This document shows positions 3,413-26,098 of a stretch of DNA of 64,000 bases, piece by piece. Below the pieces are notes generated by a model. It was not told the DNA's origin and ran no database searches. It saw only the letters and a list, made by a program, of their open reading frames with translations. Location of the stretch: sequence record NC_041917.1; one strand, given 5' to 3'. How positions within the stretch are numbered: the first letter of the stretch is position 1; every line of letters starts with the position of its first letter. The position numbers and the translations under genes were made by a program.

Positions 3413-3537
3413 GGCGAGTTAGCTCAGTTGGTAGAGCACGTAGAAACCCAAGATTCAAGTACTTGAATCTTACAGCAACAATAACTCATACACTTTTAAT
3501 GTCGTGGTCGTTGGTTCGAATCCAACACTCGCCGCCA
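3413..3537 (+). tRNA. tRNA-Lys(UUU) interrupted by a 49-nt insertion (3441-3489)
   Basis: Acceptor GGCGAGT/ACTCGCC plus G-CCA; CG|ACA-CTTTTAA-TGTCG after removal; T-arm GTTGG-TTCGAAT-CCAAC. Confidence 0.9.
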
Positions 3538-3554
3538 AATAATAAGGAGTACAT

Positions 3555-3761
3555 ATGTTCCTTGATGAAATTAAATCTGTTCCATTCCCAAGCTATAAAG
3601 CTTTGGAAAAATCACGTAACGAATCGTCTAAGTCTGTTAATCCAACAACTTATGATCGTTATGAAAAGTACCATTATCCTGCTGGTACAGAATTCCGTTT
3701 AGCAAAAGCTATTGATTCTGTAATTGTAAAAATTAAAAAGGTAATTAACTATGTCGGTTAA
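3555..3761 (+). CDS. hypothetical protein
   Basis: AAGGAG RBS. Confidence 0.7.
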   Translation: MFLDEIKSVPFPSYKALEKSRNESSKSVNPTTYDRYEKYHYPAGTEFRLAKAIDSVIVKIKKVINYVG

Positions 3762-4356
3762 ATTCACACCAGTAGTAACTACATTGAAAAACACACTTGT
3801 TGTTGAATTGGAATACGAGCATGGTGATGCAGATGCAACTACCTTTGAATATGTAAATATTCCAGTACTTCCTGAACAAAAAGAAAGTATTGGTGTGTTA
3901 CTTTCAATGATTGAGCACGGTCTTGAATGTCAAAATGCTGAACGTGATGACTACACTATTGACCCGTTCTTTGTTGATGAAACCATTGATTATGATGATA
4001 ATCAAGGTATTCCATTAGTTGGTGTTGAAGTTCGCTTCAGTTTTGATTATAATTCTCCGAAAGAGAAAGGAACTGTCGTTAGCGTTGACCACGAACAGAA
4101 ATATATCATTATTCGTTCATCTACTGGTGAAGAACACCAATTTGACTTTGATGAAATTGAAGATTGTATTGCTTCATCAACAGGTATGATGGTAATGGAT
4201 GGTGGTGAAATTAGCTTTACATATAATGGTATTAATGTTAACATTGGCAATGTTGGTGATTGTACTGTTGATTGTCAATTTAATGCATCGGGTGGTATTA
4301 ATGCGGTTTATTACTACGATGAAAATGCTATTAAATACAGTGTAACTGAATATTAA
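3751..4356 (+). CDS. acidic hypothetical protein
   Basis: GAGG-like RBS, 201 aa. Confidence 0.75.
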   Translation: MSVKFTPVVTTLKNTLVVELEYEHGDADATTFEYVNIPVLPEQKESIGVLLSMIEHGLECQNAERDDYTIDPFFVDETIDYDDNQGIPLVGVEVRFSFDYNSPKEKGTVVSVDHEQKYIIIRSSTGEEHQFDFDEIEDCIASSTGMMVMDGGEISFTYNGINVNIGNVGDCTVDCQFNASGGINAVYYYDENAIKYSVTEY

Positions 4357-4371
4357 AATTTGCGGGAACGC

Positions 4372-4401
4372 TTGACAAACTGCCAAAGACCCCGCTATAA
4401 T
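4372..4401 (+). promoter_or_regulatory. sigma70-type promoter
   Basis: TTGACA-N18-TATAAT. Confidence 0.7.
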
Positions 4402-4563
4402 AGAGGGGTTCTTTATGAAGCATTATTATGATGTATTAGTGACGGTAGTTGTGTTATTCGGTCTTGCAACTTGTTTGTTTAAAAGTATAATTGTGGCATT
4501 TATTGGAATAGCAATATTCTTTTTAGGATGCCTTGTTGAATATCTTATCAATAGGAACAAAAC

Positions 4564-4905
4564 ATGAAACACTTCTTGGAAGTACTGTTCGTAGCAATTG
4601 CAATTTTGGCTGGTTTATTAGGTCACGTTGGTCTTGCGATTTGGGCAGGTATGTTTGGTGTGATTATGTGGTTTATTATCCCAAATCCAACGTACCAACC
4701 ACAAGTTCCTGTAGTACCAAAAATTAATGGTATTGAAGTGGAATTTAAATATCGTTCAGATGAAGAAGGTAAAACGTTCACCATCGTTGTGCCAAATAAT
4801 GGTGATGAAGAAATTGTTAATGTGGTTAAGTACATTAACAATTTAACAGGTACAGAAACCTCGGCTGAACGTTTAGAGATTTTATCTACTAAGTACTTAA
4901 TTTAA
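4564..4905 (+). CDS. membrane protein
   Basis: AGGAA RBS; N-terminal TM segments. Confidence 0.7.
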   Translation: MKHFLEVLFVAIAILAGLLGHVGLAIWAGMFGVIMWFIIPNPTYQPQVPVVPKINGIEVEFKYRSDEEGKTFTIVVPNNGDEEIVNVVKYINNLTGTETSAERLEILSTKYLI

Positions 4906-4921
4906 GAGTACTTTAATAGTG

Positions 4922-4945
4922 AAAGCCCTTATTAAAGGGCTTTTT
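4922..4945 (+). terminator. intrinsic terminator
   Basis: AAAGCCCTT-ATT-AAAGGGCTTTTT hairpin with T tract. Confidence 0.7.
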
Positions 4946-4949
4946 AATT

Positions 4950-5035
4950 GGGGATATGGCGAAATTGGTAAGACGCACCACACTCAAAATGTGGCGGTTT
5001 AATCCGTGTCGGTTCGACTCCGACTATCCCCACCA
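4950..5035 (+). tRNA. tRNA-Leu(CAA)
   Basis: CCACA-CTCAAAA-TGTGG, long variable arm, CCA end. Confidence 0.95.
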
Positions 5036-5119
5036 AAAAAAAGATTGACAGTGCTACAAATTTTAAGTAAGATAGAGTCATTGAGTTCAGCAAGTTTAAA
5101 AAAATCTTTAAAAAACTGC

Positions 5120-5148
5120 TTGACAAGTGATTACAAATTCGATACTAT
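5120..5148 (+). promoter_or_regulatory. sigma70-type promoter
   Basis: TTGACA-N17-TACTAT. Confidence 0.7.
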
Positions 5149-5234
5149 GTATCACATCGACGGATGTAAAACGTATCTCTTGGTACTCAACGTTGAGTAC
5201 TGTTTTAGAAAATAATATATAAGGGCTTTAAAAA

Positions 5235-5456
5235 ATGGCTAAGAACACTATTACTGATATTGGCGAAGTTGAACGTACTGTGAACTACATCAAGTTCCAG
5301 ATCTCTCAAGCTGACGAACAGCTTGCTCCATTCGCTAACAGCGATAAGCCAAAGATCTGCTATGCACATCTGTTGGATTGGAAAAAACAGTTGCAGTCTG
5401 AACTGTATGAAATCCGTCAGGCTCAGCAGAAAGCACGTCACAACACGCACAAGTAA
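5235..5456 (+). CDS. hypothetical protein
   Basis: AAGGG RBS; downstream hairpin. Confidence 0.7.
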   Translation: MAKNTITDIGEVERTVNYIKFQISQADEQLAPFANSDKPKICYAHLLDWKKQLQSELYEIRQAQQKARHNTHK

Positions 5457-5516
5457 TGAGCCATGCCGCTAACATCGTTAGCGGCGTCTTTTAAGTGATA
5501 AAAAGAGTATAAAAAT

Positions 5517-5759
5517 ATGAAAAGTGCAACTACTTTAAAGAACATGCATACTCGCATTGAGTTACTTAAATCACAACGTGATTTAGCATGGATTGAATGG
5601 CATAAGTTAAATGATTTGGAACAGCGTAACAAAGAGCAAGGTAAAGCATTGTCTCAAACTTTCGCCCTTATCACTAAACTGACATATGAAATTCGCGGTC
5701 TGCAAATCACCTTTGGTGAACTGAAAGAACAAGTCATCAAAGAAATCATTTTGTCTTAA
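5517..5759 (+). CDS. coiled-coil hypothetical protein
   Basis: ORF track. Confidence 0.7.
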   Translation: MKSATTLKNMHTRIELLKSQRDLAWIEWHKLNDLEQRNKEQGKALSQTFALITKLTYEIRGLQITFGELKEQVIKEIILS

Positions 5760-5775
5760 CTAAAATGGGGTTGTT

Positions 5776-6237
5776 ATGGGTGCAATTATTCTGTACAGTA
5801 TTTTAGGTTTTCTCGGTGTATTCACTTTGTATATGTTCGTTGTAACATCTGCAATGGGTACTGAACGTTTAAAAACTTCACAGTACTTTATGTCTTCATT
5901 GAGTTATAGTGAAGAAGCTACAGTAAAAATCAATCTTTTGATTGATAAGTATCAAGCTGGCTTACTTAAAGCTAAGCTTAAATCAAATGTTATAGAATTC
6001 ACCGAAATGGAAGGTAATGCACTGGCTGGTGAGATTTATATTGCAAATAAGTACTTCTCGTATGGTCAGTTGTATCGTTATGGTGCAAATGGAAATACTA
6101 AGTGGCAATGCAATAAACCAGATTTAAAAACTTTCAAGCGTATTATTAAACTTGAAAAACAACTTGATATTACTGATGAAGTTCCAGTACAAAAAAGTAC
6201 TAGTAAGTCATCAGAAGAACAGGTTATTCTGGACTAA
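5776..6237 (+). CDS. membrane-anchored hypothetical protein
   Basis: N-terminal TM helix. Confidence 0.7.
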   Translation: MGAIILYSILGFLGVFTLYMFVVTSAMGTERLKTSQYFMSSLSYSEEATVKINLLIDKYQAGLLKAKLKSNVIEFTEMEGNALAGEIYIANKYFSYGQLYRYGANGNTKWQCNKPDLKTFKRIIKLEKQLDITDEVPVQKSTSKSSEEQVILD

Positions 6238-6273
6238 GGGCAGCAATGCCCTATTTTAATTGAGAGATTTAAT

Positions 6274-6957
6274 ATGAATATCATTGAACGAGCAAAACAT
6301 ATTGTTTCCGTTTCTGAATTTGAAAGTAATGTTAATCCAATAGAAATGAAAAAGATTAAAGCAGTTTGCCCATACGATGAACAATATATTTTACGTATGG
6401 TGGTAAGTACCGATGGTTTGACCTATCACTTACCTATTGAATTACGATGGATGTATCCATTGTATATTGCAGCTTTAAAACATCAAACTGAAGTAATTGG
6501 GATAAAACATCCGTTTTGTTATATTACTGTTCGTCATGGTTTAGTTAAATCAATAACTGATGACGAATGGCACGTTGATGGATTCAGTACTAAAATTGTT
6601 CATGTACCTGAACAGAACTACATTTGGTCTAACAGTATTCCTACCGAATACACCAATGTTTCTGTTAAGTTCCCTGATGATTTTGATTCTAATATTCATA
6701 ATGTGAATCATTACTTACAAAAGTTTGTCCATAATGATGAAGTTCAGCAGTGTAAAGAAAATGTGTTGTATTGTTTAGACCCATATATCTTACATCGTCG
6801 TCCATCATCAAGTACTGGTGAAGTACGTACTTTTGTTCGTATCTCATTTGTTCCAATTGAAATCAATGATGTTAATAACACCCAAAATAAGTTATTACCA
6901 CGTACTTATAACAACGATGGGGTTCAAGTACGAAATAAATTGAGAACGTATGGCTAA
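6274..6957 (+). CDS. 2OG-Fe(II) dioxygenase-like protein
   Basis: WHVDG (HxD) ... LHRRP ... RTFVRISF double-stranded beta-helix pattern. Confidence 0.65.
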   Translation: MNIIERAKHIVSVSEFESNVNPIEMKKIKAVCPYDEQYILRMVVSTDGLTYHLPIELRWMYPLYIAALKHQTEVIGIKHPFCYITVRHGLVKSITDDEWHVDGFSTKIVHVPEQNYIWSNSIPTEYTNVSVKFPDDFDSNIHNVNHYLQKFVHNDEVQQCKENVLYCLDPYILHRRPSSSTGEVRTFVRISFVPIEINDVNNTQNKLLPRTYNNDGVQVRNKLRTYG

Positions 6958-7363
6958 AATTATTTGTGGATTTCCTGGTATAGGTAAGAGTAGTATTAAA
7001 AATATCGGCAAAGTACTTGATTTGGATAGTTCTTTGTATACCAAGAATTCTTTATTTCCTGCTAATTATATTGTTGATATTGTATCTGCAATGGATGAAT
7101 ATGATTATATTTTGGTAAGTACGCATGACGTACTTAGAAAAGAATTACAATCATTGGGTATTAGTTATACTAATGTATATCCAGAGATTGATTTAGGTGA
7201 AGAATACCACGAACGTTATGTTCAACGCGGAAGTCCTGAAAGTTTTATTAATTTTATTGATGAAAATTGGGATGACTTCATATACGAATTGCAGTATGAT
7301 GATTCTGAATATGTTGAACTGGAAAGCGGTCAATTTCTTTCAGATATTATAGCAAATATTTGA
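6950..7363 (+). CDS. P-loop kinase/NTPase
   Basis: Walker A GFPGIGKS near N-terminus, small NMP-kinase-like size. Confidence 0.7.
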   Translation: MAKIICGFPGIGKSSIKNIGKVLDLDSSLYTKNSLFPANYIVDIVSAMDEYDYILVSTHDVLRKELQSLGISYTNVYPEIDLGEEYHERYVQRGSPESFINFIDENWDDFIYELQYDDSEYVELESGQFLSDIIANI

Positions 7364-7389
7364 AACGAAAGAAAAAATTGTGGTATAAT
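7361..7389 (+). promoter_or_regulatory. TGAAAC-N17-TATAAT promoter (RNA-gene class)
   Basis: TGAAAC ... TGGTATAAT; five more copies in the window. Confidence 0.7.
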
Positions 7390-7406
7390 ATAGTACATAA
7401 GGCAAC

Positions 7407-7523
7407 GGAATCTTACAGCAAAAATACTAATTTTTGATGAAAACGAAACGACGAGGTTCGAATCCTCACCCACGAATTGCCTTATTATTAGTGGGAGCAC
7501 GGTGCTGGATAAACAAAGATTCC
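7407..7523 (+). ncRNA. ACAGCA element bracketing a degenerate permuted tRNA (Ile GAU-like)
   Basis: GGAATCTT-ACAGCA ... AAGATTCC; GAGG-TTCGAAT-CCTC precedes CCCAC..GTGGG. Confidence 0.7.
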
Positions 7524-7584
7524 AGAATTTAAGTTAGAAAATTATGAAACAAATCAAAAATTTGTGGTATAATATAAGAAGTAA

Positions 7585-7691
7585 AGCGGGATGGTGATTG
7601 ATGAAAGCTATTATTTGATTCTAGAAAATCATAATAAGTGAGTAAGAGAACAGGGTTCTTAATATCACGAGGGTTCGATCCCCTGTCGCTG
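7585..7691 (+). pseudogene. degenerate Leu(UAG)-like tRNA
   Basis: TGATT-CTAGAA-AATCA hairpin, variable-arm hairpin, AGGG-TTCGAT-CCCT; poor acceptor and D arms. Confidence 0.35.
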
Positions 7692-7706
7692 CACAAAGCA
7701 ACAAAC

Positions 7707-7824
7707 GAAATCTCACAGCAAACAAAACAATTTTTTTCCTTGCATAGAAAAACGGTGGGGTTCGATTCCCCAACATCCAAGTTGCTTTTAGGATGTGTCT
7801 GGAAGGCCGTATGACAAAGATTTC
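7707..7824 (+). ncRNA. ACAGCA element bracketing a degenerate permuted tRNA (Ala UGC-like)
   Basis: GAAATCT-C-ACAGCA ... AGATTTC; CTTGCAT loop, GGGG-TTCGATT-CCCC, ACATCC..GGATGT. Confidence 0.7.
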
Positions 7825-8000
7825 AGTTCCTATCAACTAAAAAGGATAGCATATAATGAGTTCTGAAGAAAATTTAGAATTATTAAATAAAATAATGAAT
7901 GCCATTGCAAATGGTAAATTGAGTGAAACAATGACTGAACTTGGTTACGAAGTAACTAAGAGTACTGATAAAAGTACAGAATGGTCATTAAAACAATAAT

Positions 8001-8074
8001 GTTCTGTTAGACAAATTGGTAAAGTCACCACCCTTTCAAGGTGGGGTTTACGGGTTCGACCCCCGTACAGAACG
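8001..8074 (+). tRNA. tRNA-Glu(UUC)
   Basis: CCACC-CTTTCAA-GGTGG; acceptor GTTCTGT/ACAGAAC. Confidence 0.95.
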
Positions 8075-8079
8075 CTAAA

Positions 8080-8192
8080 GGATTCGCACAGCAACAATAA
8101 AATCTTAAAATTCAATTGGTGAAAACAACCTTGCAGTTCGATTCTGCTTCCACAATGTGTGGATCTGGTGATGGATAGAAAAAACCGAATCC
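8080..8192 (+). ncRNA. ACAGCA element bracketing a highly degenerate permuted tRNA
   Basis: GGATTCG-C-ACAGCA ... AGAAA..CGAATCC; GCAG-TTCGATT-CTGC then TCCAC-AATGT-GTGGA. Confidence 0.65.
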
Positions 8193-8231
8193 TGATTTTA
8201 ATTAAGAAGTACTAAAGAATTTGATACACAC

Positions 8232-8384
8232 GGATTTATACAGCAAACATAATCCTAAAATAAAACATACGATAATGTTACTAACTCGGAATTCGTTCCC
8301 TTCGTTAGTACTTGGCAACTTGGGTACTTAAATAAGTTGTATCACCTCACGTGTATCGGATTAGAGGTGATTATAAATAAATCC
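8232..8384 (+). ncRNA. ACAGCA element with multi-hairpin cargo
   Basis: GGATTTAT-ACAGCA ... ATAAATCC; internal GGAA-TTCG-TTCC, CAACTT/AAGTTG, ATCACCTC/GAGGTGAT. Confidence 0.65.
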
Positions 8385-8392
8385 AGTAACAC

Positions 8393-8418
8393 AAAAGTAC
8401 CTTGAACGGTACTTTTTT
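8393..8418 (+). terminator. intrinsic terminator
   Basis: AAAAGTACC-TTGAAC-GGTACTTTTTT. Confidence 0.7.
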
Positions 8419-8420
8419 AT

Positions 8421-8513
8421 GGTAGGTTGGCAGAGTTTGGCTTATTGCACTTGTCTTGAAAACAAGCGGGGGTTAACAGCCCTCCGAGGGTTCAAATCCC
8501 TCACCTACCTCCA
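8421..8513 (+). tRNA. tRNA-Ser(UGA)
   Basis: CTTGT-CTTGAAA-ACAAG, long variable arm, CCA. Confidence 0.95.
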
Positions 8514-8530
8514 ATACAATAAAGGTGAAC

Positions 8531-8842
8531 ATGATGGATTCAGTTGGTTTAATCGTTGTGTTTTTAGAACAACGTGTTCGTGGTTCTCATGAAATACATT
8601 ATGTAGTACAAGTTACTGAAGAAGGAACTTGTGACGTTCATGTTACGGACTCATGGAGTTTTAAGTCATGGGAAGATTTAAAAGAAACGCATCCTACTTT
8701 CAAAAGTTTGTTATATGAATTTTTTAATTCTTGCAATTGGGCACCTTATGTAAACGAAAAAGAAATTTGGGCTGATGAAGTAATCGGCGGCGAAGGTCTT
8801 TATGATGATTATGATTCACATGTATTAAGTACTGATTTGTAA
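8531..8842 (+). CDS. hypothetical protein
   Basis: AAGGTG RBS. Confidence 0.7.
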   Translation: MMDSVGLIVVFLEQRVRGSHEIHYVVQVTEEGTCDVHVTDSWSFKSWEDLKETHPTFKSLLYEFFNSCNWAPYVNEKEIWADEVIGGEGLYDDYDSHVLSTDL

Positions 8843-8850
8843 AGTTCAAT

Positions 8851-8925
8851 GGGGTACGTAGCTCAGTCTGGTAGAGCAGCCATGCGAAAACGGTGTGTCG
8901 GTGGTTCGAATCCACTCGCTCCCCA
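8851..8925 (+). pseudogene. pseudo-tRNA (Phe GAA-like, damaged anticodon arm)
   Basis: Good D and T arms; acceptor has 2 mismatches; anticodon stem poorly paired around GCGAAAA. Confidence 0.5.
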
Positions 8926-8929
8926 CTAA

Positions 8930-8986
8930 GGAATCTAGCAGCAACCATAACCCAATCAAACTTTTAATTTGACAATTATGGATTCC
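8930..8986 (+). ncRNA. ACAGCA element carrying an isolated Lys(UUU) anticodon stem-loop
   Basis: GGAATCT-A-GCAGCA ... TCAAA-CTTTTAA-TTTGA ... GGATTCC. Confidence 0.75.
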
Positions 8987-9164
8987 CGTTATTTTTAAGG
9001 ATGTGATATGTCTAAAGAACAAGATGATTTTGAAAAAGAATATCTTATAAGTAAGCGTATTGATCCAAAAGCAACATTTTATATAAAATCTCGTAGAAAG
9101 AAAAATGGTTATAGAACTCGTGAATTGAATAATAAATTTCAAGAATTTCTTAAACGATTTAAAG

Positions 9165-9256
9165 GGTAAAGTGGCAGAGCGGCTGAATGCAACCGCTTGG
9201 AAAGCGGTCAGGTTAGGTAATCCCTAGCCTCGTAGGTTCAAATCCTATCTTTACCG
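9165..9256 (+). tRNA. tRNA-Ser(GGA)
   Basis: ACCGC-TTGGAAA-GCGGT, long variable arm. Confidence 0.9.
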
Positions 9257-9308
9257 CAAAGTAATAACTCCTTATTAAAGTGAAGTACAAAAACAACAGG
9301 AGAATATT

Positions 9309-9665
9309 ATGTACGAGAAAGATGATGGTCCATTAACTGATGAACAAATTCGTATCATCCGTGAAATGAATAGCCATCTGAATCAAACTGATTTAGAAAT
9401 TGATTTAAATTGGTTGAACAGTGATATACAAGGAAATGCAATGTATTACGACTATTATTACAAAGTTGACGGTGACCTTCGTCGTTATACCAGTAATCAA
9501 GAGTTAACGGATGCGGAAATCAATAATATTTTTGGTGCAAGCAAACAAGTAGTAATGCTTACTCCAATTGTATTTGAACGTGACGTAACTACTGAAGACA
9601 AATCTGGTAAAAAGATTAAAAGTACTGAAAAAGTACATGTTGGCTTCTTAGGATATGTGGAATAA
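9309..9665 (+). CDS. hypothetical protein
   Basis: AGGAG RBS. Confidence 0.7.
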   Translation: MYEKDDGPLTDEQIRIIREMNSHLNQTDLEIDLNWLNSDIQGNAMYYDYYYKVDGDLRRYTSNQELTDAEINNIFGASKQVVMLTPIVFERDVTTEDKSGKKIKSTEKVHVGFLGYVE

Positions 9666-9667
9666 AA

Positions 9668-10354
9668 ATGTCAAAAAAGACTGATAAAGAAGTAAAAGAT
9701 ACAAAAGAAAAGTACACTGTTGTTAAACACGGCTCACTAACACTAGTGAATACACCAACAGTAAAAACTTTCTATATGAATGGTTCTATTGATCATCCTA
9801 CATTAACTAAGTTCCAAAAGTTCTTAGAAGATACATGTACGGAAAATAATAAAATTGATACCGAAGAAACTGAACGCAAAGAAAAGGATGAATTTAAAAA
9901 GATTCATGATCCTGAATCTAAGCCAGAGTTTGTTCCTGCTAAACGTAAAGTTGAGCGTATCAATCTGGTTATCAATAGTGGTGGTGGTTTAGTTGCAGTA
10001 ATGCTAGAAGTTGTAGCACTAATGAAAACTTCACCAATTCCAATTGATACCTACTGTTTTGGTTCTGCAATGAGTGCAGCTTTCTTTATCTTCTTACATG
10101 GCAAACGCCGTTTTGTTGGTGAAGGTGCCTCATTTATGACACATAGCATTGGTGCTATGGCATGGGATAATGTACCAAACATGACAATTCGTATGGAGTA
10201 CTTGGTTAAACAAAACGAGTACGCACAACAGGAAATTGCTAAACGTACTGGAATTCCTCTTGAAAAATTAAAAGAGAAAGAACATCTCGATTGGTACTTG
10301 ACTGCTGAAGAAGCGTTAGATGTTAAAATCGGTGAATATTTGATCCGAGATTAA
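9668..10354 (+). CDS. clpP: ClpP-like serine protease
   Basis: INSGGG, AMSAA (catalytic Ser), MTHS (His), DWYLTAEEA. Confidence 0.85.
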   Translation: MSKKTDKEVKDTKEKYTVVKHGSLTLVNTPTVKTFYMNGSIDHPTLTKFQKFLEDTCTENNKIDTEETERKEKDEFKKIHDPESKPEFVPAKRKVERINLVINSGGGLVAVMLEVVALMKTSPIPIDTYCFGSAMSAAFFIFLHGKRRFVGEGASFMTHSIGAMAWDNVPNMTIRMEYLVKQNEYAQQEIAKRTGIPLEKLKEKEHLDWYLTAEEALDVKIGEYLIRD

Positions 10355-10400
10355 ATATAAATTCTGGATTCGAAAGAATCCTTTTTTAAGTGAGATGATT

Positions 10401-10625
10401 ATGGACAATCAACACAAACATATTAAAGGGTATCGTGACCTTTCACAAAAAGAAGTGGATGCGATGAATGAGATTAAACAACTGGCTGCCACCATTGGAG
10501 AGTTGATAGAAAAACTTGAAAGTACTGAATCAGTAGATAAACGTTGGCTTGCAATTGCAAAGACGGATTTACAAAAAGGATTCATGTCAGCAGTACGAAG
10601 TGTGGCTAAACCAGATTCCTTCTAA
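10401..10625 (+). CDS. acb2: anti-CBASS nucleotide sponge Acb2 (T4 Vs.4-like)
   Basis: MDNQHKHIKGYRDLSQ ... RWLAIAKTDLQKGFMSAVRSVAKPDSF closely follows the Acb2/Vs.4 signature. Confidence 0.9.
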   Translation: MDNQHKHIKGYRDLSQKEVDAMNEIKQLAATIGELIEKLESTESVDKRWLAIAKTDLQKGFMSAVRSVAKPDSF

Positions 10626-10634
10626 GGAACAAAG

Positions 10635-11015
10635 ATGTATACAACGGTTAATCATGCTGATATAATTGATGATATTATAACTGAAATACTTGAAATTTAT
10701 ACATGTCGAGTTGAAATTTATAAAGATGGTCATTTATTCACTCAGTACGGGTATAATACTAAACATAATGTGAATTATCATATAAATGTAAAGTACTATA
10801 ATGATAATCCAAGTAATGGTGATAAAGCGAATAGCTTAATGGTAGAATTTAAATTTACCAATAGAGTTCCGAAGGGACTAAAAAATCATTACAAGTTATC
10901 TATACCTGAAATAACAAGTCTTACAGAAGAACGGCATTTTCAATTAATGTTTATCACTGATGATATGTATTTGGATTATGAAGTTATAAATAAATTACGT
11001 ACACATATTGTGTAA
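10635..11015 (+). CDS. hypothetical protein (EExxFQ family)
   Basis: EERHFQL motif. Confidence 0.7.
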   Translation: MYTTVNHADIIDDIITEILEIYTCRVEIYKDGHLFTQYGYNTKHNVNYHINVKYYNDNPSNGDKANSLMVEFKFTNRVPKGLKNHYKLSIPEITSLTEERHFQLMFITDDMYLDYEVINKLRTHIV

Positions 11016-11023
11016 AAAAGTTT

Positions 11024-11077
11024 TAGAATCTAACAGCAATCAAAACTCATTGGATATATGAAAAAAGATAGATTCTA
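11024..11077 (+). ncRNA. minimal ACAGCA element
   Basis: TAGAATCTA-ACAGCA ... TCAT-TGGATAT-ATGA ... TAGATTCTA. Confidence 0.75.
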
Positions 11078-11083
11078 GTATTT

Positions 11084-11156
11084 GGGAATATAATTCAGTT
11101 GGTAGAATGCTCGACCGATAATCGAGTCGCCGCTGGTTCGAGTCCAGCTATTCCCA
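11084..11156 (+). tRNA. tRNA-Ile(GAU)
   Basis: CTCGA-CCGATAA-TCGAG (C33 rather than U33). Confidence 0.9.
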
Positions 11157-11255
11157 CGAAGTAGTTCAGTACTGAAAAATGTACAGTGAAATTATTCAAC
11201 ACTATAGGTAGCACTTTGAATGAATCAGTAAGCCTATAAGTAACTACAATAAATT

Positions 11256-11384
11256 TGGAATTCAACAGCAATTCACTTACTAAAAACAGCTACCTCACGG
11301 TTTGTAGGTTCAAGTCCTACCTTGTACTTTCGAGTACATGTGGTGAAAATGGTAAACACGGCTGTCCAAAAGAAATGAATTCCA
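11256..11384 (+). tRNA. circularly permuted tRNA-Leu (probably UAA) inside an ACAGCA element
   Basis: 3' half (ACAGC, variable arm, T-arm, CTTGTAC) precedes TTTCGA linker and 5' half (GTACATG, D-arm, GCTGT). Confidence 0.85.
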
Positions 11385-11436
11385 GTATTAATTAAGACAT
11401 AAATATTCTTATACACTTTTTTGTAAGGATATAATT

Positions 11437-12036
11437 ATGGAAATGAAAAAGTTGATGGAAGATATTTCTGCCATCATGGAAGGACAACTACCTGGTTATT
11501 ATTATCATGGAAGTTCTGCCCCAATATCAAATTTTAGTGATGAGTTTGTTGGTAGAGGAAATGATGAATACGGTCCGGGAATATATTTTAGTTCAGTTCC
11601 AAATACTTCTATAGGTTATGCAAAAGATGGCGGTTCTAATGGAATGGTATATCAGTGCGAAATCAATTTAAGAAAAGAACTATCTAAAAAAACTAGAGTT
11701 AATAAAGCAGTACTATTAAAATTAATGCAAAATACACCTGATGAAGATGCATATACTAACTGGAATGAAAATAAAAATGTTGCTTATAGAACAGCATTAC
11801 AGGGTTATGTAGATGAAGGTAATATGTATGATGCGTTAATGGGTGTTTGGTACGATTGGTATAGAGAATATCCTGTTCAATTCGTGCGTTCACTAGTACA
11901 GTTAGGATATGATGGATACATATATACTTTTGCAAGCGGTGAACGTTTTATTATAGTATATAATCCAGCAAGTATAAAAGTTGTAAACACATTCAATCCA
12001 GAAGAAGCTATGCAGAAACTGATTGGAAGTGAATAA
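11437..12036 (+). CDS. ADP-ribosyltransferase-like protein
   Basis: YHGS ... GPGIYFS ... ERFIIVYNP pattern of ART-fold (ART-PolyVal-like) domains. Confidence 0.55.
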   Translation: MEMKKLMEDISAIMEGQLPGYYYHGSSAPISNFSDEFVGRGNDEYGPGIYFSSVPNTSIGYAKDGGSNGMVYQCEINLRKELSKKTRVNKAVLLKLMQNTPDEDAYTNWNENKNVAYRTALQGYVDEGNMYDALMGVWYDWYREYPVQFVRSLVQLGYDGYIYTFASGERFIIVYNPASIKVVNTFNPEEAMQKLIGSE

Positions 12037-12043
12037 TAAGATT

Positions 12044-12163
12044 TGGAATTCAACAGCAAATCATTCTAAACCCGTAGCATGTCGTAGGTTCAAGTCCTAC
12101 CAGTACTATCGAGTACTGTAGCTCAGTTGGTAGAGCAGCCACCTTAAAAAGAAATGAATTCCA
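12044..12163 (+). tRNA. circularly permuted class I tRNA inside an ACAGCA element (anticodon uncertain)
   Basis: GTAGC-ATGTC-T-arm-CAGTACT-ATCG-AGTACTG-TA-GCTCAGTTGGTAGAGC-A-GCCAC. Confidence 0.8.
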
Positions 12164-12194
12164 GTATTAATTAAAACAACATGAGTATAAATCA

Positions 12195-12644
12195 ATGTCT
12201 GATAAGCATCAATTTAAAGTAAACATCGGTGATTGGTCACAAGATGGTCATAATCAATATGATGTTTTAGTTCTTAACAGTACTAAACCAGTAGATGAAG
12301 TACAAAAAGCATTTAAAAAAGCTGCAACAGATTTACATTTACTAGTAAATGGTCGTTTTCTAATTGCAGATGAATTTGAAGATTGTAGTCTATCTGAAGA
12401 CCATGCAGAAGTTCTTAAAAATGCAGGTGTAAAATTTGATGATTTAGTGTATAATGATGGCGATGATGAAGAACCAAATTATATTATTGAAGGTTCAAGT
12501 GATATGACTATCCTAGTGATGCGTATCGCCCAACTTGAATTGGACTTTGAATTTGAAATTACGAATGATGCAATTCCGAACTTTAACGGGTTCTGGACAG
12601 AAGAACAAATGCCATCAATCGGATATGGTTTGTATAACATATAA
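12195..12644 (+). CDS. hypothetical protein
   Basis: ORF track. Confidence 0.75.
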   Translation: MSDKHQFKVNIGDWSQDGHNQYDVLVLNSTKPVDEVQKAFKKAATDLHLLVNGRFLIADEFEDCSLSEDHAEVLKNAGVKFDDLVYNDGDDEEPNYIIEGSSDMTILVMRIAQLELDFEFEITNDAIPNFNGFWTEEQMPSIGYGLYNI

Positions 12645-12653
12645 AACAAGTTT

Positions 12654-12718
12654 TGGAATCTAGCAGCACCCATAAAATGAAATCAACTGTTAATTGAAAA
12701 ATTCAAAAATGGATTCCA
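12654..12718 (+). ncRNA. ACAGCA element carrying an isolated Asn(GUU) anticodon stem-loop
   Basis: TGGAATCT-A-GCAGCA ... TCAA-CTGTTAA-TTGA ... GGATTCCA. Confidence 0.7.
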
Positions 12719-12738
12719 GCCTATTTCGGAGTAAAAAA

Positions 12739-13008
12739 ATGTATTATGCTCGATTAGAATATCCAAACAATGGATATGAGATTGAAAGAATACGTCTTAA
12801 AGCCTTAGATCGCAAAAAGTACTATCCAGTAGTTTCGATTGATATTGGTAGTTCAAGTACTCGCATATATCTTGAAGGTGATAAGAATGCATATAATAGT
12901 GTGAACTTTGAATTCTATACCAAACATGGTGATGAATATATTCTTGAAGATATTTTCGAAGACCCTGATTTAAACCCGTACTTGGATGATGATGACGAAG
13001 AATATTAA
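12739..13008 (+). CDS. hypothetical protein
   Basis: ATG 12739 after GGAG. Confidence 0.7.
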   Translation: MYYARLEYPNNGYEIERIRLKALDRKKYYPVVSIDIGSSSTRIYLEGDKNAYNSVNFEFYTKHGDEYILEDIFEDPDLNPYLDDDDEEY

Positions 13009-13076
13009 ATAAAAATACCACAAATAAATGAAACGCTTCAAAAAATTGTGGTATAATATAAGTAAGTTAAACAAGA

Positions 13077-13148
13077 GGTTATGTCGTATAAAGGTTATTA
13101 CGGAGAGCTGTTAACTCTTTTATCTTGGTTCGATTCCAAGCATGACCG
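13077..13148 (+). tRNA. tRNA-Asn(GUU)
   Basis: GAGAG-CTGTTAA-CTCTT; acceptor GGTTATG/CATGACC; atypical D-arm. Confidence 0.85.
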
Positions 13149-13265
13149 CAAAAAGTTAAATTCACCAGGCGTACTATGGTGGGAAAGGTATCATGATACC
13201 AATTCGAATAGAATACGTATTAAACCCTTGAACGGTTTTCTGTAAACTCAATTTAACAAATAATT

Positions 13266-13320
13266 AAGAATCTAACAGCAATAAAAACTCATTCGATTAT
13301 ATGAAAAAAGATAGATTCTT
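13266..13320 (+). ncRNA. minimal ACAGCA element
   Basis: AAGAATCTA-ACAGCA ... TAGATTCTT; near copy of 11024-11077. Confidence 0.75.
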
Positions 13321-13325
13321 GTTTT

Positions 13326-13398
13326 AGGAGTATGGTGTAATTGGTTAGCACACGTGACTTTGACTCACGTAGTTGAGGTTCGAGTCCTTATATTCCTG
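13326..13398 (+). tRNA. tRNA-Gln(UUG)
   Basis: CGTGA-CTTTGAC-TCACG. Confidence 0.95.
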
Positions 13399-13549
13399 CA
13401 AATTAAAATTTCATTCATTTCCTTGTGTGAAACAAGCTGGTATGATTCCCCTTGCTTGTAAAATTATCGAACGGGAACCGCGTTGCACCTGTACAGGTCA
13501 GATTGTAAAGATCGAGTATGTACAGTACTGAGAGCGGCAGTACAACAAA

Positions 13550-13631
13550 GCGGGATTAGCTCAGTGGTAGAGCACTTGCCTTCCAAGCAAGAGGCGAATA
13601 GGTTCCATCGGTTCGAATCCGATATTCCGCT
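13550..13631 (+). tRNA. tRNA-Gly(UCC) with 15-nt variable region
   Basis: CTTGC-CTTCCAA-GCAAG; U73. Confidence 0.9.
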
Positions 13632-13749
13632 CAAACTAAACAAACAATAAGGTGATTTTTATGCTATAGAATCCTAGTACTGGTCCTCCTAAAGAATTTA
13701 ATTCTGATATAAACAACTCAAAATTAAACTACTATAGGAAGAACATACC

Positions 13750-14076
13750 ATGTTAAACAAAGAACAATATATTACTGTAAAAAATACTTGGAAAGCTGTA
13801 AAAGAACATAACATTTTTGATCATGTGATCTATAATGTACTTCGTGGAGTCCCATCTGATACTGGTTTCGCACCAATTACAGACAGGGGTCGTTTACACG
13901 CTAACAACAATGACCCGTTCAATATGTACAATTTCGCAGTTCGTGAAATTCATTATGAATTAAACGAAAAACGGTACAATTACGAAAAGACAGTAAAGCA
14001 TTATTCTGAACTATTCGGCATTGAATTTACAAAAGAACTCATCGAAGAAATTGTTTCTTTGATTAAAGTTAAATAA
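13750..14076 (+). CDS. hypothetical protein
   Basis: AGGAAG RBS. Confidence 0.7.
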   Translation: MLNKEQYITVKNTWKAVKEHNIFDHVIYNVLRGVPSDTGFAPITDRGRLHANNNDPFNMYNFAVREIHYELNEKRYNYEKTVKHYSELFGIEFTKELIEEIVSLIKVK

Positions 14077-14084
14077 CAGAATTA

Positions 14085-14141
14085 AAGAATCCAGCAGCAA
14101 CTAAAACTCATTCGCTTAATATGAAAAAGAAACGGATTCTT
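14085..14141 (+). ncRNA. minimal ACAGCA element
   Basis: AAGAATCC-A-GCAGCA ... AGAAA-C-GGATTCTT. Confidence 0.75.
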
Positions 14142-20064: not shown

Positions 20065-20151
20065 GGGTCGTTCACTCAGTTGGTTAGAGTACCGGACTTT
20101 TAATCCGGCGGGTATATCCCATCGAAGGTTCGAATCCTTCACGGCCTACCA
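20065..20151 (+). tRNA. tRNA-Lys(UUU) with long variable arm
   Basis: CCGGA-CTTTTAA-TCCGG then GGG-TATAT-CCC arm; CCA. Confidence 0.9.
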
Positions 20152-25975: not shown

Positions 25976-26098
25976 ATTTTTCTCCTTTTTATATTTATAA
26001 AAAGATTCAAGATTTAGGTTCGAAATCGGTATCTATAAAAAATGAAAAAAATTTGAAACGGTAGGAAAAAATGTGGTATAATATACACATAAAGAAAT

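What the first reader, a model, noticed from the sequence alone, without database searches (positions are those of the whole stretch)
8930..8986. Stand-alone Lys(UUU) anticodon stem-loop inside an element: possible anticodon-nuclease decoy
Seen: a perfect TCAAA-CTTTTAA-TTTGA (8956-8972) with no other tRNA parts. It starts 12 nt after GCAGCA and ends 7 nt before the closing stem. These spacings match the intron tails in the interrupted tRNAs (10-12 nt after the motif, 7-12 nt before the stem). Established: PrrC recognises the Lys anticodon stem-loop. Inference: this is a mini RNA or circle that titrates PrrC/PARIS-type nucleases or Lys-tRNA modifying enzymes.
Basis: partly seen in the sequence, partly recalled or inferred. 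Interest (0 to 1): 0.8.

Follow-up and report, generated by a model that had tools for sequence, protein, structure and literature searches.

The report
Phage Y-like RNA mimicking tRNA-Lys anticodon
The hairpin is real and belongs to a small phage RNA with a conserved "handle", probably bound by a Ro60-like phage protein, whose tip copies the anticodon loop of lysine tRNA; such RNAs turn out to be widespread in phages and may act in the fight over tRNA-cutting bacterial defences.

Summary
The window is the last 64 kb of Serratia jumbo phage BF. At 8930-8986 a closing stem (8930-8937/8979-8986) encloses an invariant CAGCAA motif (8939-8944) and a perfect TCAAA-CTTTTAA-TTTGA hairpin (8956-8972).

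It is one of 11 stand-alone copies, plus one copy inside a tRNA-Lys-like gene. All lie on the + strand between 3413 and 14141.

The "handle" is a terminal stem, then CAGCAA, an A-rich 3' junction, and the returning stem strand. It recurs in tandem beside DUF2828 genes in unrelated Felix-like, Listeria, Aeromonas and mycobacterial phages. BF's DUF2828 protein (gp180) folds like Ro60. Long paralogues carry a YrlA-like tRNA domain.

A covariance model built only from those unrelated phages ranks the finding among its top five hits in 264 kb of BF. IMG/VR holds at least 115 distinct handle-plus-Lys-anticodon-arm RNAs, many next to a Ro-like gene.

Best reading: a Y-RNA-like small RNA that displays a tRNA-Lys(UUU) anticodon-arm mimic. 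The decoy function is plausible but untested. The intron and circle reading is not supported. The handle also matches the hallmarks of Dictyostelium Class I RNAs.

The parts
8930..8986 (+). The finding: a small RNA gene of about 57 nt (covariance-model match 8927-8989) with the CAGCAA handle and a tRNA-Lys(UUU) anticodon-arm mimic.
   Evidence: R1 scores it 51.5 bits (it is a training member). The independent model R2 scores it 22.7 bits, E 0.015.
8930..8937 (+). Closing stem P1, 5' arm. It pairs with 8979-8986: 8 bp including one G-U.
   Evidence: Cells paired: 98% within the lineage and 91% across lineages; compensatory changes at 3 of 7 and at 8 of 8 pairs respectively.
8939..8944 (+). CAGCAA motif. 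CAGCA is invariant in 33 of 33 aligned family members from five phage lineages. Proposed contact site for the Ro60-like protein.
   Evidence: invariant columns.
8956..8972 (+). Apical hairpin TCAAA-CTTTTAA-TTTGA. The 7-nt loop is identical to the anticodon loop of tRNA-Lys(UUU).
8979..8986 (+). Closing stem P1, 3' arm, followed by CGU (8987-8989).
12654..12718 (+). Closest paralogue: same handle, apical hairpin TCAA-CTGTTAA-TTGA with an Asn(GUU)-type loop. It lies upstream of tRNA-Asn and is conserved in XbC2, Kaldavass, GAP32 and CBB.
11024..11077 (+). Short paralogue with handle only and almost no cargo.
13266..13320 (+). Short paralogue with handle only.
14085..14141 (+). Short paralogue with handle only.
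12044..12163 (+). Long paralogue: the handle encloses a tRNA-like domain (T arm, capped acceptor hairpin, D arm). It matches Rfam YrlA at 40.3 bits, below the gathering score of 69.
11256..11384 (+). Long paralogue with a tRNA-like domain that has a long variable arm.
7407..7523 (+). Long paralogue with a T arm and capped acceptor hairpin. It lies behind a strong extended -10 promoter-like site (7360-7389).
7707..7824 (+). Long paralogue with a T arm and capped acceptor hairpin.
8079..8193 (+). Long paralogue with a T arm and short acceptor hairpin.
8232..8384 (+). Long paralogue (153 nt) with larger cargo.
3413..3534 (+). tRNA-Lys(UUU)-like gene with the same handle as a capped hairpin inside a 49-nt insert (3441-3489). 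The insert splits the anticodon stem 2+3 bp. CAGCAA is at 3473-3478 and the loop CTTTTAA at 3493-3499.
   Evidence: Compensatory changes occur on both sides of the insert in XbC2, Kaldavass and GAP32.

Best explanation
8930-8986 encodes a small non-coding RNA of about 57-62 nt from a large phage family of Y-RNA-like RNAs.

Shown:
- The RNA has a handle made of a terminal stem joining its 5' and 3' ends, an invariant CAGCAA two to three bases inside the 5' arm, and an A-rich 3' junction.
- The part between is variable cargo. Here the cargo is a hairpin whose 7-nt loop and closing A-U pair equal the anticodon loop of tRNA-Lys(UUU).
- The handle family sits next to genes for DUF2828 proteins in unrelated phages.
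- BF's DUF2828 protein (gp180, record 101477-103003, outside the window) is predicted to fold like Ro60.

Inferred:
- The RNA is cut out of the polycistronic tRNA-cluster transcript.
- gp180 binds the stem and CAGCAA handle as Ro60 binds Y RNA.
- The resulting particle presents a tRNA-Lys anticodon-arm mimic to a protein that recognises that arm. The most likely partner is a host tRNA-Lys-directed anticodon nuclease, which it would occupy or divert while the phage's own tRNA-Lys with an altered stem (20065-20151) carries translation.

Rough likelihoods: family membership about 0.85, partnership with the Ro-like protein about 0.6, the decoy step about 0.3.
For: Family and structure:
- There are 11 stand-alone copies plus one inside a tRNA-Lys-like gene, all on the + strand at 3413-14141. 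None was found in 231 kb of the rest of BF.
- The closing stem is 91% paired across five lineages, with compensatory changes at 8 of 8 pairs and 0 of 500 shuffles as good.

Link to the Ro-like protein:
- gp180 is Pfam DUF2828+DUF7788 and PHROG 850 'RNA-binding protein'.
- Its AlphaFold model has pLDDT 87.9. The top 11 PDB matches are all Ro60/TROVE, over the full length, E 7e-9 to 1e-6.
- Tandem handles lie directly beside the DUF2828 gene in Felixounavirus UAB_Phi87, Mycobacterium phage Lewan (no tRNA gene in that locus), Listeria phage LMTA-94 and Aeromonas phage LAh_9.
- Of 192 IMG/VR loci chosen only by CAGCAA plus a Lys hairpin, 173 have a perfect closing stem of at least 6 bp, against 12% at random positions.
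- 68 of those loci hold a Ro-like gene 21-42% identical to gp180. It is on the same strand in 68 of 68, at a median distance of 1.5 kb.

Independent membership test: model R2, built without any RaK2-like phage, returns the five short BF elements as its top five hits in 264 kb. The finding scores 22.7 bits, E 0.015; the next hit has E 0.32.

Y-RNA likeness: the paralogue at 12044-12163 matches Rfam YrlA across its tRNA-like domain. Known Y RNAs have a terminal stem with a conserved motif and lie beside Ro60 genes. [quoted passage not shown]

tRNA-Lys mimicry:
- The loop is identical to E. coli tRNA-Lys.
- One subfamily copies 15 of 17 nt of that stem-loop.
- A second helix flanks the hairpin across a 1-nt by 3-4-nt internal loop in about 80% of 115 distinct RNAs.
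- 106 of 192 loci also carry a phage tRNA-Lys(UUU) whose anticodon stem differs from the mimic.
Against: - No expression or binding data exist for this phage.
- In BF the Ro-like gene is about 200 kb from the RNAs.
- The canonical Ro-binding motif (GNCGAAN0-1G or CGAA) is absent.
- The finding's stem TCAAA/TTTGA is not the enterobacterial tRNA-Lys anticodon stem (GTTGA/TCAAT), so only the loop and its closing pair are copied.
- In CBB the loop is different.
- The hairpin is thermodynamically unremarkable.
- The R2 E-value for the finding is modest and the calibration is rough.
- Vibrio phage nt-1 has the protein but no handle within 3 kb.
- AriB is reported to need contacts outside the anticodon arm, which weakens the case for a bare arm as a PARIS decoy.
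Confidence: 0.6

Rival explanations
1. A Y-RNA-like partner of the Ro-like protein, but without tRNA mimicry. The apical hairpin would be only a small pyrimidine-rich loop, as in YrlB or Yrn2, and the particle would gate the protein or tether it to a host exoribonuclease such as PNPase, as described for Ro60-Y RNA-PNPase complexes.
For: YrlB-type Y RNAs are long hairpins with small pyrimidine-rich loops (PMC4201824). The phage phiLo Ro60 and its Yrl RNAs assemble with host PNPase (PMC12135203). Most family members have cargo that is not anticodon-like. CBB has a different loop.
Against: The exact loop CTTTTAA with a C-U-NNN-A-A frame is kept in at least 115 distinct RNAs whose handles and second helices vary. 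One subfamily copies 15 of 17 nt of the host tRNA-Lys arm. A paralogue carries the exact Asn(GUU) loop next to tRNA-Asn.
Confidence: 0.17
2. One reading: a protein-free mini RNA or circle, excised by the same reaction that removes the inserts of the interrupted tRNAs, which soaks up PrrC/PARIS-type nucleases or Lys-tRNA modifying enzymes.
For: The circular order of parts is the same as in the insert of the tRNA-Lys-like gene 3413-3534. BF encodes T4-type Rnl1, Pnkp and an Rnl2-like ligase.
Against: No bulge-helix-bulge, group I or ribozyme signature was found. In long paralogues, joining the flanks gives no conserved anticodon loop. In Aeromonas phage LAh_9 the handle replaces the whole anticodon loop of a tRNA-like RNA, so excision would leave no anticodon. 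A 17-25-nt circle closed over a 5-bp stem is sterically unlikely (inference). The handle is explained by its link to the Ro-like gene.
Confidence: 0.08
3. An evolutionary relic: a decayed fragment of an interrupted tRNA-Lys gene, left next to the degenerate tRNA-like sequence 8852-8924, with no function of its own.
For: In GAP32 the orthologue directly follows an interrupted tRNA-Lys. In BF it follows a weak tRNA-like sequence scoring 36 bits. Part of it is sequence-similar to the insert of 3413-3534.
Against: It is 100% identical between BF and the Yersinia phage while the flanks are replaced. Stems covary and CAGCA is invariant across genera. XaC1 has two copies with different stems. More than 100 relatives exist in unrelated phages.
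Confidence: 0.04
4. A cis-acting signal in the polycistronic transcript, such as a terminator, an RNase processing site or a translational element for the downstream 53-aa ORF (9008-9169).
For: It lies 5 nt after a tRNA-like sequence and 21 nt before an ORF start. The family has conserved flanks, (A/U)AG...C(U)GU, that could be processing sites.
Against: No terminator-like site was called here and no U-run follows. The downstream ORF differs between BF and the Yersinia phage while the element is identical. Family members occur in tandem without ORFs between them.
Confidence: 0.05

Closest known systems
Bacterial and phage Y RNAs (YrlA/YrlB, Rfam RF02553; Yrl1/Yrl2 of Thermus phage phiLo), partners of Ro60/Rsr
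   Same: Small RNAs whose 5' and 3' ends form a stem next to a conserved single-stranded motif. Cargo is modular, including a tRNA-like domain (T arm, capped acceptor, D arm) or a simple hairpin with a pyrimidine-rich loop. Several genes occur per genome, often beside a Ro60-type gene and among tRNA genes (PMC4201824, PMC12135203).
   Different: The motif is CAGCAA, not GNCGAAN0-1G or CGAA. The protein partner would be the divergent DUF2828 branch, which is not found by a sequence search against solved Ro60 structures. The Rfam YrlA model reaches only 40 bits on one paralogue and gives no hit on the finding. Cargo that copies an anticodon arm has not been described for Y RNAs in the papers read.
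Dictyostelium Class I RNAs (Rfam RF01414)
   Same: They are 42-65 nt long, with a 6-bp terminal stem whose sequence varies by compensatory change. An 11-nt motif ending in ACAGCAA follows directly after the 5' arm, the middle is variable, the start is conserved (A)AG and the end is CUGU, and genes lie in clusters (PMC7919456). The finding has the five near-invariant motif positions (T3, C6, C9, A10, A11). RF01414 is the best Rfam hit for six Aeromonas-phage modules. Typical phage ends are (A/U)AG...CUGU.
   Different: Scores are 18-30 bits against a gathering score of 41.5, and the finding itself gives no hit. Class I RNAs are reported as unique to Dictyostelia and bind the RRM protein Rnp1A/Cibp. 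No link to a Ro-like protein is reported, and whether dictyostelids encode DUF2828 could not be tested here. Common descent versus convergence is open.
Phage tRNA variants that bypass tRNA-cleaving defences (for example T5 tRNA-Lys(UUU), Thr, Asn against PARIS AriB; T4 Pnkp/Rnl1 repair against PrrC)
   Same: The same tRNAs are involved: Lys(UUU) and, in the paralogue, Asn(GUU). BF also carries an unusual tRNA-Lys(UUU) with an altered stem and the T4-type repair enzymes (PMC12409363).
   Different: Those are full, decoding tRNAs that replace the cleaved host tRNA. The finding is only an anticodon-arm mimic on a protein-binding handle and cannot be charged or decode.
Intron-containing and circularly permuted tRNA genes (archaeal bulge-helix-bulge introns; permuted tRNAs of Cyanidioschyzon)
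   Same: At first sight the order of parts in the long paralogues (3' half, capped acceptor, 5' half) and the insert in 3413-3534 resemble these.
   Different: There is no bulge-helix-bulge motif, no conserved anticodon after a hypothetical join, and no splicing endonuclease was identified. The topology is the one described for YrlA.

Membership tests
Y RNA (YrlA/YrlB type) | 5' and 3' ends pair to form a terminal stem | tested here: met
   8930-8937 pairs with 8979-8986. Covariation was shown.
Y RNA (YrlA/YrlB type) | Conserved Ro-binding motif GNCGAAN0-1G (CGAA) near the 5' end | tested here: not met
   The motif here is CAGCAA. The published motif is quoted from PMC4201824 and PMC12135203.
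Y RNA (YrlA/YrlB type) | A Ro60 orthologue is encoded in the same genome, usually adjacent | tested here: met
   gp180 folds like Ro60 but lies about 200 kb away in BF. Adjacency is seen in four other phage lineages and in 68 of 192 IMG/VR loci.
Y RNA (YrlA/YrlB type) | At least one family RNA in the genome carries a tRNA-like domain; Rfam RF02553 gathering score is reached | tested here: inconclusive
   12077-12139 matches model positions 24-84 at 40.3 bits, E 2e-6, against a gathering score of 69. The finding itself has no such domain.
Y RNA (YrlA/YrlB type) | Physical binding to the Ro60 protein | not testable with these tools
   Inferred only from gene linkage and architecture.
Dictyostelium Class I RNA (RF01414) | 42-65 nt, 6-bp terminal stem, variable middle | tested here: met
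   The finding is 57 nt with a 6-8-bp stem. Features are taken from PMC7919456.
Dictyostelium Class I RNA (RF01414) | 11-nt motif next to the 5' arm with near-invariant T3, C6, C9, A10, A11 | tested here: met
   8934-8944 reads TCTAGCAGCAA, so all five positions agree (consensus printed by cmscan).
Dictyostelium Class I RNA (RF01414) | Rfam gathering score (41.5 bits) | tested here: not met
   No hit for 8900-9010 at E up to 10. Relatives in the Aeromonas phage score 18-30 bits.
Dictyostelium Class I RNA (RF01414) | Conserved 3' end CUGU, with the C paired to the 5' G | tested here: inconclusive
   The finding ends ...CC-CGU (8985-8989). Most phage relatives end CUGU.
tRNA gene or pseudogene | Cloverleaf with acceptor, D and T arms | tested here: not met
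   ARAGORN and Rfam find nothing at 8930-8986. Only an anticodon-arm-like hairpin is present.
tRNA intron (bulge-helix-bulge or group I) or excised circle | Splice-site structure, and a join that restores a functional RNA | tested here: not met
   No intron family hit. Joins in paralogues give no conserved anticodon loop. The Aeromonas-phage case leaves no anticodon.
Intrinsic terminator | G+C-rich hairpin followed by a U-run | tested here: not met
   No site was called at 8930-8990. The hairpin is A+T-rich.

The most novel reading that the evidence does not exclude
The stem-plus-CAGCAA RNAs are the so far unrecognised RNA partners of the very widespread DUF2828 (Ro60-like) phage proteins and share ancestry with Dictyostelium Class I RNAs. 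The Lys (and Asn) anticodon-arm subfamily forms a ribonucleoprotein decoy or trap that neutralises host nucleases aimed at those tRNAs, working together with nuclease-resistant phage tRNA-Lys genes.
Probability: 0.25. Interest if true: 0.9.

Novelty: new variant of a known kind. Interest (0 to 1): 0.8.

Why it matters
DUF2828 'RNA-binding proteins' occur in at least 709 deposited phage genomes and in thousands of metagenomic sequences, yet no RNA partner or role is established for them. One preprint reports that such a protein in coliphage Bas63 counters a defence system, and guesses that some neighbouring 'tRNA genes' are Y RNAs (PMC11482910).

The family described here gives that guess a concrete RNA signature that can be searched for. 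It also shows that one common cargo is a copy of the tRNA-Lys anticodon arm, the target of several anti-phage nucleases. That points to a new kind of counter-defence particle.

It further explains 'interrupted' or odd tRNA annotations in jumbo phages. And it raises an unexpected link to the Class I RNAs of social amoebae, whose molecular role has been open since 2004.

Tried and rejected
1. Thermodynamic folding of 8925-8995 is no better than shuffles, so stability is not evidence.
2. Rfam at gathering and at E up to 10 gives nothing for the finding itself.
3. I first read the long paralogues as circularly permuted tRNA genes, and the insert in 3413-3534 as an intron with a shared processing motif. 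I rejected this because hypothetical joins give no conserved 7-nt anticodon loop, the topology is that of YrlA, and the Aeromonas-phage tRNA-like RNA has the handle in place of the whole anticodon loop.
4. The promoter and terminator scan shows no site at the finding.
5. A sequence search of gp180 against solved structures found nothing relevant. A fold comparison was needed.
6. The YrlA model finds nothing in the Felix-like and mycobacteriophage loci.
7. Vibrio phage nt-1 has no handle within 3 kb of its DUF2828 gene.
8. I looked for a Thr(UGU)-type mimic, the third PARIS target. None is in the window or in record 262000-293154.
9. The last Rfam call listed only tRNAs and tmRNAs among its best 150, so it cannot say whether any phage module reaches the Class I gathering score.
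10. Avesson et al. 2011 (proteins bound to Class I RNA) is not held. Literature on DUF2828 is absent from the library. Whether dictyostelids encode DUF2828 could not be tested.
11. BF record 200001-261999 was not scanned.

Every sequence in this report comes from a tool output or a quoted paper (E. coli tRNA-Lys, the Class I consensus, motifs).
Full report
SOURCE. The window is identical to the last 64 kb of Serratia phage BF (NC_041917, Eneladusvirus, 357 kb). Window position 1 corresponds to record position 293155. The first 27 kb are a tRNA cluster with 21-22 tRNA genes interspersed with small ORFs.

OBSERVATION. The layout is:
- GGAATC at 8930-8935
- GCAGCA at 8938-8943
- 12 nt of spacer
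- TCAAA-CTTTTAA-TTTGA at 8956-8972
- 7 nt of spacer
- GGATTCC at 8980-8986

The closing stem can be drawn as 8 bp (8930-8937 with 8979-8986, including one G-U). No tRNA is called here. The element starts 5 nt after a weak tRNA-like sequence (8852-8924, 36 bits, annotated tRNA-Ser) and ends 21 nt before a 53-codon ORF. Folding energy is unremarkable, z = -0.72. No promoter- or terminator-like site falls on it.

A FAMILY IN THE WINDOW. A search for CAGCA preceded by a short arm whose complement lies downstream gives eleven stand-alone elements. All are on the + strand.
- Long forms: 7407-7523, 7707-7824, 8079-8193, 8232-8384, 11256-11384, 12044-12163.
- Short forms: 8930-8986, 11024-11077, 12654-12718, 13266-13320, 14085-14141.

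The same parts, with the stem capped by a loop, form a 49-nt insert (3441-3489) in the anticodon stem of a tRNA-Lys(UUU)-like gene at 3413-3534. No convincing copy was found in 231 kb of the rest of BF. Record 200001-261999 was not scanned.

The short elements hold little or nothing between the junctions. The exceptions are the finding (Lys-type loop) and 12654-12718 (TCAA-CTGTTAA-TTGA, an Asn(GUU)-type loop, 360 nt upstream of tRNA-Asn). The long ones enclose a T arm, an acceptor-like hairpin closed by a loop, and a D arm.

CONSERVATION.
- The finding is identical in Yersinia phage fHe-Yen9-03, although the upstream ORF is absent there and the downstream ORF is different.
- Orthologues exist in Xanthomonas phages XaC1 (two tandem copies with different closing stems) and XbC2, Erwinia phage Kaldavass and Cronobacter phage GAP32. 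They keep the hairpin stem. The loop is CTTTTAA or CTTTTAC.
- In GAP32 the orthologue directly follows an interrupted tRNA-Lys.
- In Pectobacterium phage CBB the stem is kept but the loop is CCTAACC. The neighbouring interrupted tRNA has also lost its CTTTTAA loop.
- Within this lineage the closing stem is 98% paired, with compensatory changes at 3 of 7 pairs.
- The interrupted tRNA-Lys is conserved at 122-127 nt in XbC2, Kaldavass and GAP32. Compensatory changes occur on both sides of the insert and in the insert's hairpin.

WHAT THE LONG PARALOGUES ARE. 12077-12139 matches Rfam YrlA (Y RNA-like) over model positions 24-84, which cover the T arm, the capped acceptor hairpin and the D arm. The score is 40.3 bits, E 2e-6, below the gathering score of 69. 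I had first read these elements as circularly permuted tRNA genes. But joining their ends gives no conserved anticodon loop in BF, XbC2 or GAP32.

Published Y RNAs have exactly this plan: a stem made by the two ends, a conserved motif thought to contact Ro60, and a variable module that in YrlA mimics tRNA. [quoted passage not shown] Thermus phage phiLo Ro60 binds two such RNAs encoded next to its gene (PMC12135203).

A Ro60-LIKE PROTEIN IN BF. BF gp180 (record 101477-103003) is annotated 'RNA-binding protein' and lies two genes after an Rnl2-like RNA ligase.
- It is Pfam DUF2828+DUF7788 and PHROG 850.
- A sequence search against solved structures found nothing.
- An AlphaFold model from 29 homologues (pLDDT 87.9, pTM 0.86) has as its 11 best PDB matches only Ro60/TROVE proteins: Xenopus, human, Deinococcus Rsr and phage phiLo. 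The alignments run over the full length, with E from 7e-9 to 1e-6 and TM about 0.55. vWA domains follow as the next matches.
- Homologues occur in 709 deposited phage genomes and are annotated 'Ro-like RNA binding protein' in mycobacteriophages.

BF also encodes T4-type Rnl1 and Pnkp, a CCA-adding enzyme and a Thg1-like enzyme.

THE HANDLE TRAVELS WITH THE PROTEIN. In unrelated phages the same architecture lies in tandem right beside the DUF2828 gene. It consists of a closing stem of lineage-specific sequence, 1-3 nt, CAGCAA, variable cargo, an A-rich stretch, and the returning stem strand.
- Felixounavirus UAB_Phi87: four copies, one with a tRNA-like domain.
- Mycobacterium phage Lewan: three copies directly 3' of the gene, and no tRNA gene in the locus.
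- Listeria phage LMTA-94: three copies directly 5' of the gene.
- Aeromonas phage LAh_9: at least seven copies, plus a tRNA-like RNA in which the handle replaces the anticodon loop.
- Vibrio phage nt-1: none within 3 kb.

Across the five lineages CAGCA is invariant in 33 of 33 aligned members. The closing stem is 91% paired, with compensatory changes at 8 of 8 pairs and 0 of 500 shuffles as good.

A covariance model built only from the four non-RaK2 lineages (A6, R2) was run over 264 kb of BF on both strands. Its five best hits are exactly the five short BF elements. The finding scores 22.7 bits, E 0.015; the next hit has E 0.32. E-values from these models are rough.

THE LYS CARGO IS WIDESPREAD. 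One Aeromonas-phage copy carries TTTGA-CTTTTAA-TCAAA. [quoted passage not shown]

Two exact-pattern scans of IMG/VR were run:
- CAGCAA, 8-20 nt, then the host-like arm: 87 loci.
- CAGCAA, 8-20 nt, then the BF-type arm: 105 loci.

For 21-22 specified bases I estimate fewer than about one chance match per pattern. That figure is my own estimate, not a computed value.

The patterns did not ask for a closing stem. Even so, 173 of 192 matches have a perfect stem of at least 6 bp starting within 3 nt of CAGCAA, against 12% at random positions in the same loci. This gives 115-117 distinct RNAs of 54-71 nt with about 60 different closing stems.

In about 80% of them a second helix of covarying sequence flanks the hairpin across an internal loop of 1 nt on the 5' side and 3-4 nt on the 3' side. 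I read that geometry as reminiscent of position 26 and the variable loop of a tRNA; this is inference.

Sixty-eight of the 192 loci (median length 8.6 kb) contain a Ro-like gene 21-42% identical to gp180. It is always on the same strand as the RNA, at a median distance of 1.5 kb.

One hundred and six loci also carry a phage tRNA-Lys(UUU) gene, and its anticodon stem differs from the mimic. The commonest in BF-type loci is CCGGA/TCCGG, the stem of BF's own tRNA-Lys at 20065-20151.

LIKELY FUNCTION.

Shown:
- The RNA architecture, its covariation, its linkage to a Ro60-like gene, and the copy of the tRNA-Lys anticodon loop.

Inferred:
- The RNA is released from the tRNA-cluster transcript.
- gp180 binds the handle.
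- The apical arm is offered to a protein that recognises the tRNA-Lys anticodon arm.

Host nucleases that cut tRNA-Lys(UUU) are established anti-phage weapons. PARIS AriB cuts tRNA-Lys(UUU), Thr(UGU) and, less well, Asn(GUU), at U36AAUC|A41. Phage T5 escapes with variant tRNAs (PMC12409363). That PrrC is such a nuclease and is countered in T4 by Pnkp and Rnl1 rests on my own knowledge.

A phage that carries a resistant tRNA-Lys, repair enzymes and a displayed host-type Lys arm fits a decoy or trap model. The host-like subfamily even contains the AriB site. This step remains conjecture for three reasons. The finding's own stem (U39-U40-U41) lacks that site. AriB needs contacts outside the arm. 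And no BF element has a Thr-type loop. An alternative is that the loop serves only as a generic Y-RNA loop.

RESEMBLANCE TO DICTYOSTELIUM CLASS I RNAs. The best Rfam family for six Aeromonas-phage modules is RF01414, at 18-30 bits against a gathering score of 41.5.

Class I RNAs are 42-65 nt long. They have a 6-bp terminal stem that varies by compensatory change and an 11-nt motif directly after the 5' arm, in which T3, C6, C9, A10 and A11 are nearly invariant. They start (A)AG and end CUGU. They are reported as unique to Dictyostelia (PMC7919456).

The finding has all five motif positions (8934-8944). Among 441 distinct phage modules the commonest ends are (A/U)AG...CUGU, and the commonest bases before CAGCA are TTA, TAA and ATA. 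The finding itself gives no RF01414 hit. I could not test whether dictyostelids encode DUF2828 proteins. I therefore record this as a striking likeness, not as membership.

NOVELTY. Phage Ro60 homologues with Y-like RNAs are known. A preprint suggests that tRNA-like genes next to a Ro60-like gene in coliphage Bas63 may be Y RNAs (PMC11482910). In the library and in Rfam I found no description of the following:
- the CAGCAA handle as the RNA signature linked to DUF2828 proteins;
- the anticodon-arm cargo;
- tRNA-Lys genes with an embedded handle;
- the likeness to Class I RNAs.

I therefore rate the finding as a new variant of a known kind.

DECLARED SLIP.

Noticed in passing
window 8852-8924: A tRNA-like sequence (Rfam 36 bits; not called by ARAGORN; annotated tRNA-Ser in BF and in the Yersinia phage). 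It has two mismatches in the acceptor stem and no proper anticodon stem, yet it is 100% conserved in Yersinia phage fHe-Yen9-03. It occupies the place where GAP32 has the interrupted tRNA-Lys that precedes the finding-type element.
   Followed up: partly
window 20065-20151 and 13550-13632: tRNA-Lys(UUU) with a long, hairpin-forming variable arm and anticodon stem CCGGA/TCCGG. This stem is also the commonest in phage tRNA-Lys genes next to BF-type Lys mimics in IMG/VR. tRNA-Gly(UCC) has a variable region of about 15 nt. Both are unusual for these isoacceptors.
   Followed up: partly
window 7396-7406 with 7476-7484, and 7697-7704 with 7781-7789: In the two long elements 7407-7523 and 7707-7824, the 8 nt just upstream of the closing stem are complementary to the loop that caps the acceptor-like hairpin (TAAGGCAA/TTGCCTTA and AAAGCAAC/GTTGCTTT). 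The sequences differ but the complementarity is the same, which suggests a pseudoknot or an alternative fold.
   Followed up: no
window 7360-7389, 7544-7573, 13028-13057 (and TGTGGTATAAT at about 26066-26083): Strong extended -10 promoter-like sites (TGTGGTATAAT with a TTGAAA/ATGAAA -35) lie in front of handle RNAs and tRNAs. 7544-7573 precedes an unannotated stretch of about 115 nt (about 7585-7700) that ends in a T-arm-like hairpin.
   Followed up: no
L012 2974-3092 and 3094-3157 (Pectobacterium phage CBB): Both the interrupted tRNA-Lys-like gene (annotated tRNA-Ser AGA, 119 nt) and the following finding-type element have lost the CTTTTAA loop in CBB, while the stems and handles are kept. 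This looks like a joint loss of Lys identity.
   Followed up: partly
L016 1467-2018 (Listeria phage LMTA-94): A ROOL RNA-like match (84 bits, gathering score 99) lies about 1 kb upstream of the DUF2828 gene. An RtcB-type 'tRNA-splicing ligase' gene lies about 1.3 kb downstream, and the three handle RNAs sit between the ROOL-like match and the DUF2828 gene.
   Followed up: no
L014 557-1516 and L017 4537-5445: An SPFH/band-7 gene lies next to the Ro-like gene in both Mycobacterium phage Lewan and Aeromonas phage LAh_9. BF also encodes an SPFH protein (gp022), but far from gp180.
   Followed up: no
L017 349-465 (Aeromonas phage LAh_9): A tRNA-like RNA with a complete acceptor, D arm, T arm and 5-bp anticodon stem. 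Its anticodon loop is replaced by 52 nt holding a capped handle (CAGCAA) and a small hairpin, so it cannot decode. It parallels BF 3413-3534.
   Followed up: partly
IMG/VR loci L019-L210: Other handle RNAs in these loci have 7-nt apical loops in the C-U-NNN-A-A frame with other triplets (TGA, GCA, CAT, GAA, GTA, GTT; 3-6 distinct RNAs each). This hints that anticodon-loop display may extend beyond Lys and Asn. Counts are low and the loci were chosen by the Lys pattern. tmRNA-like genes are also present (L168, L148).
   Followed up: partly
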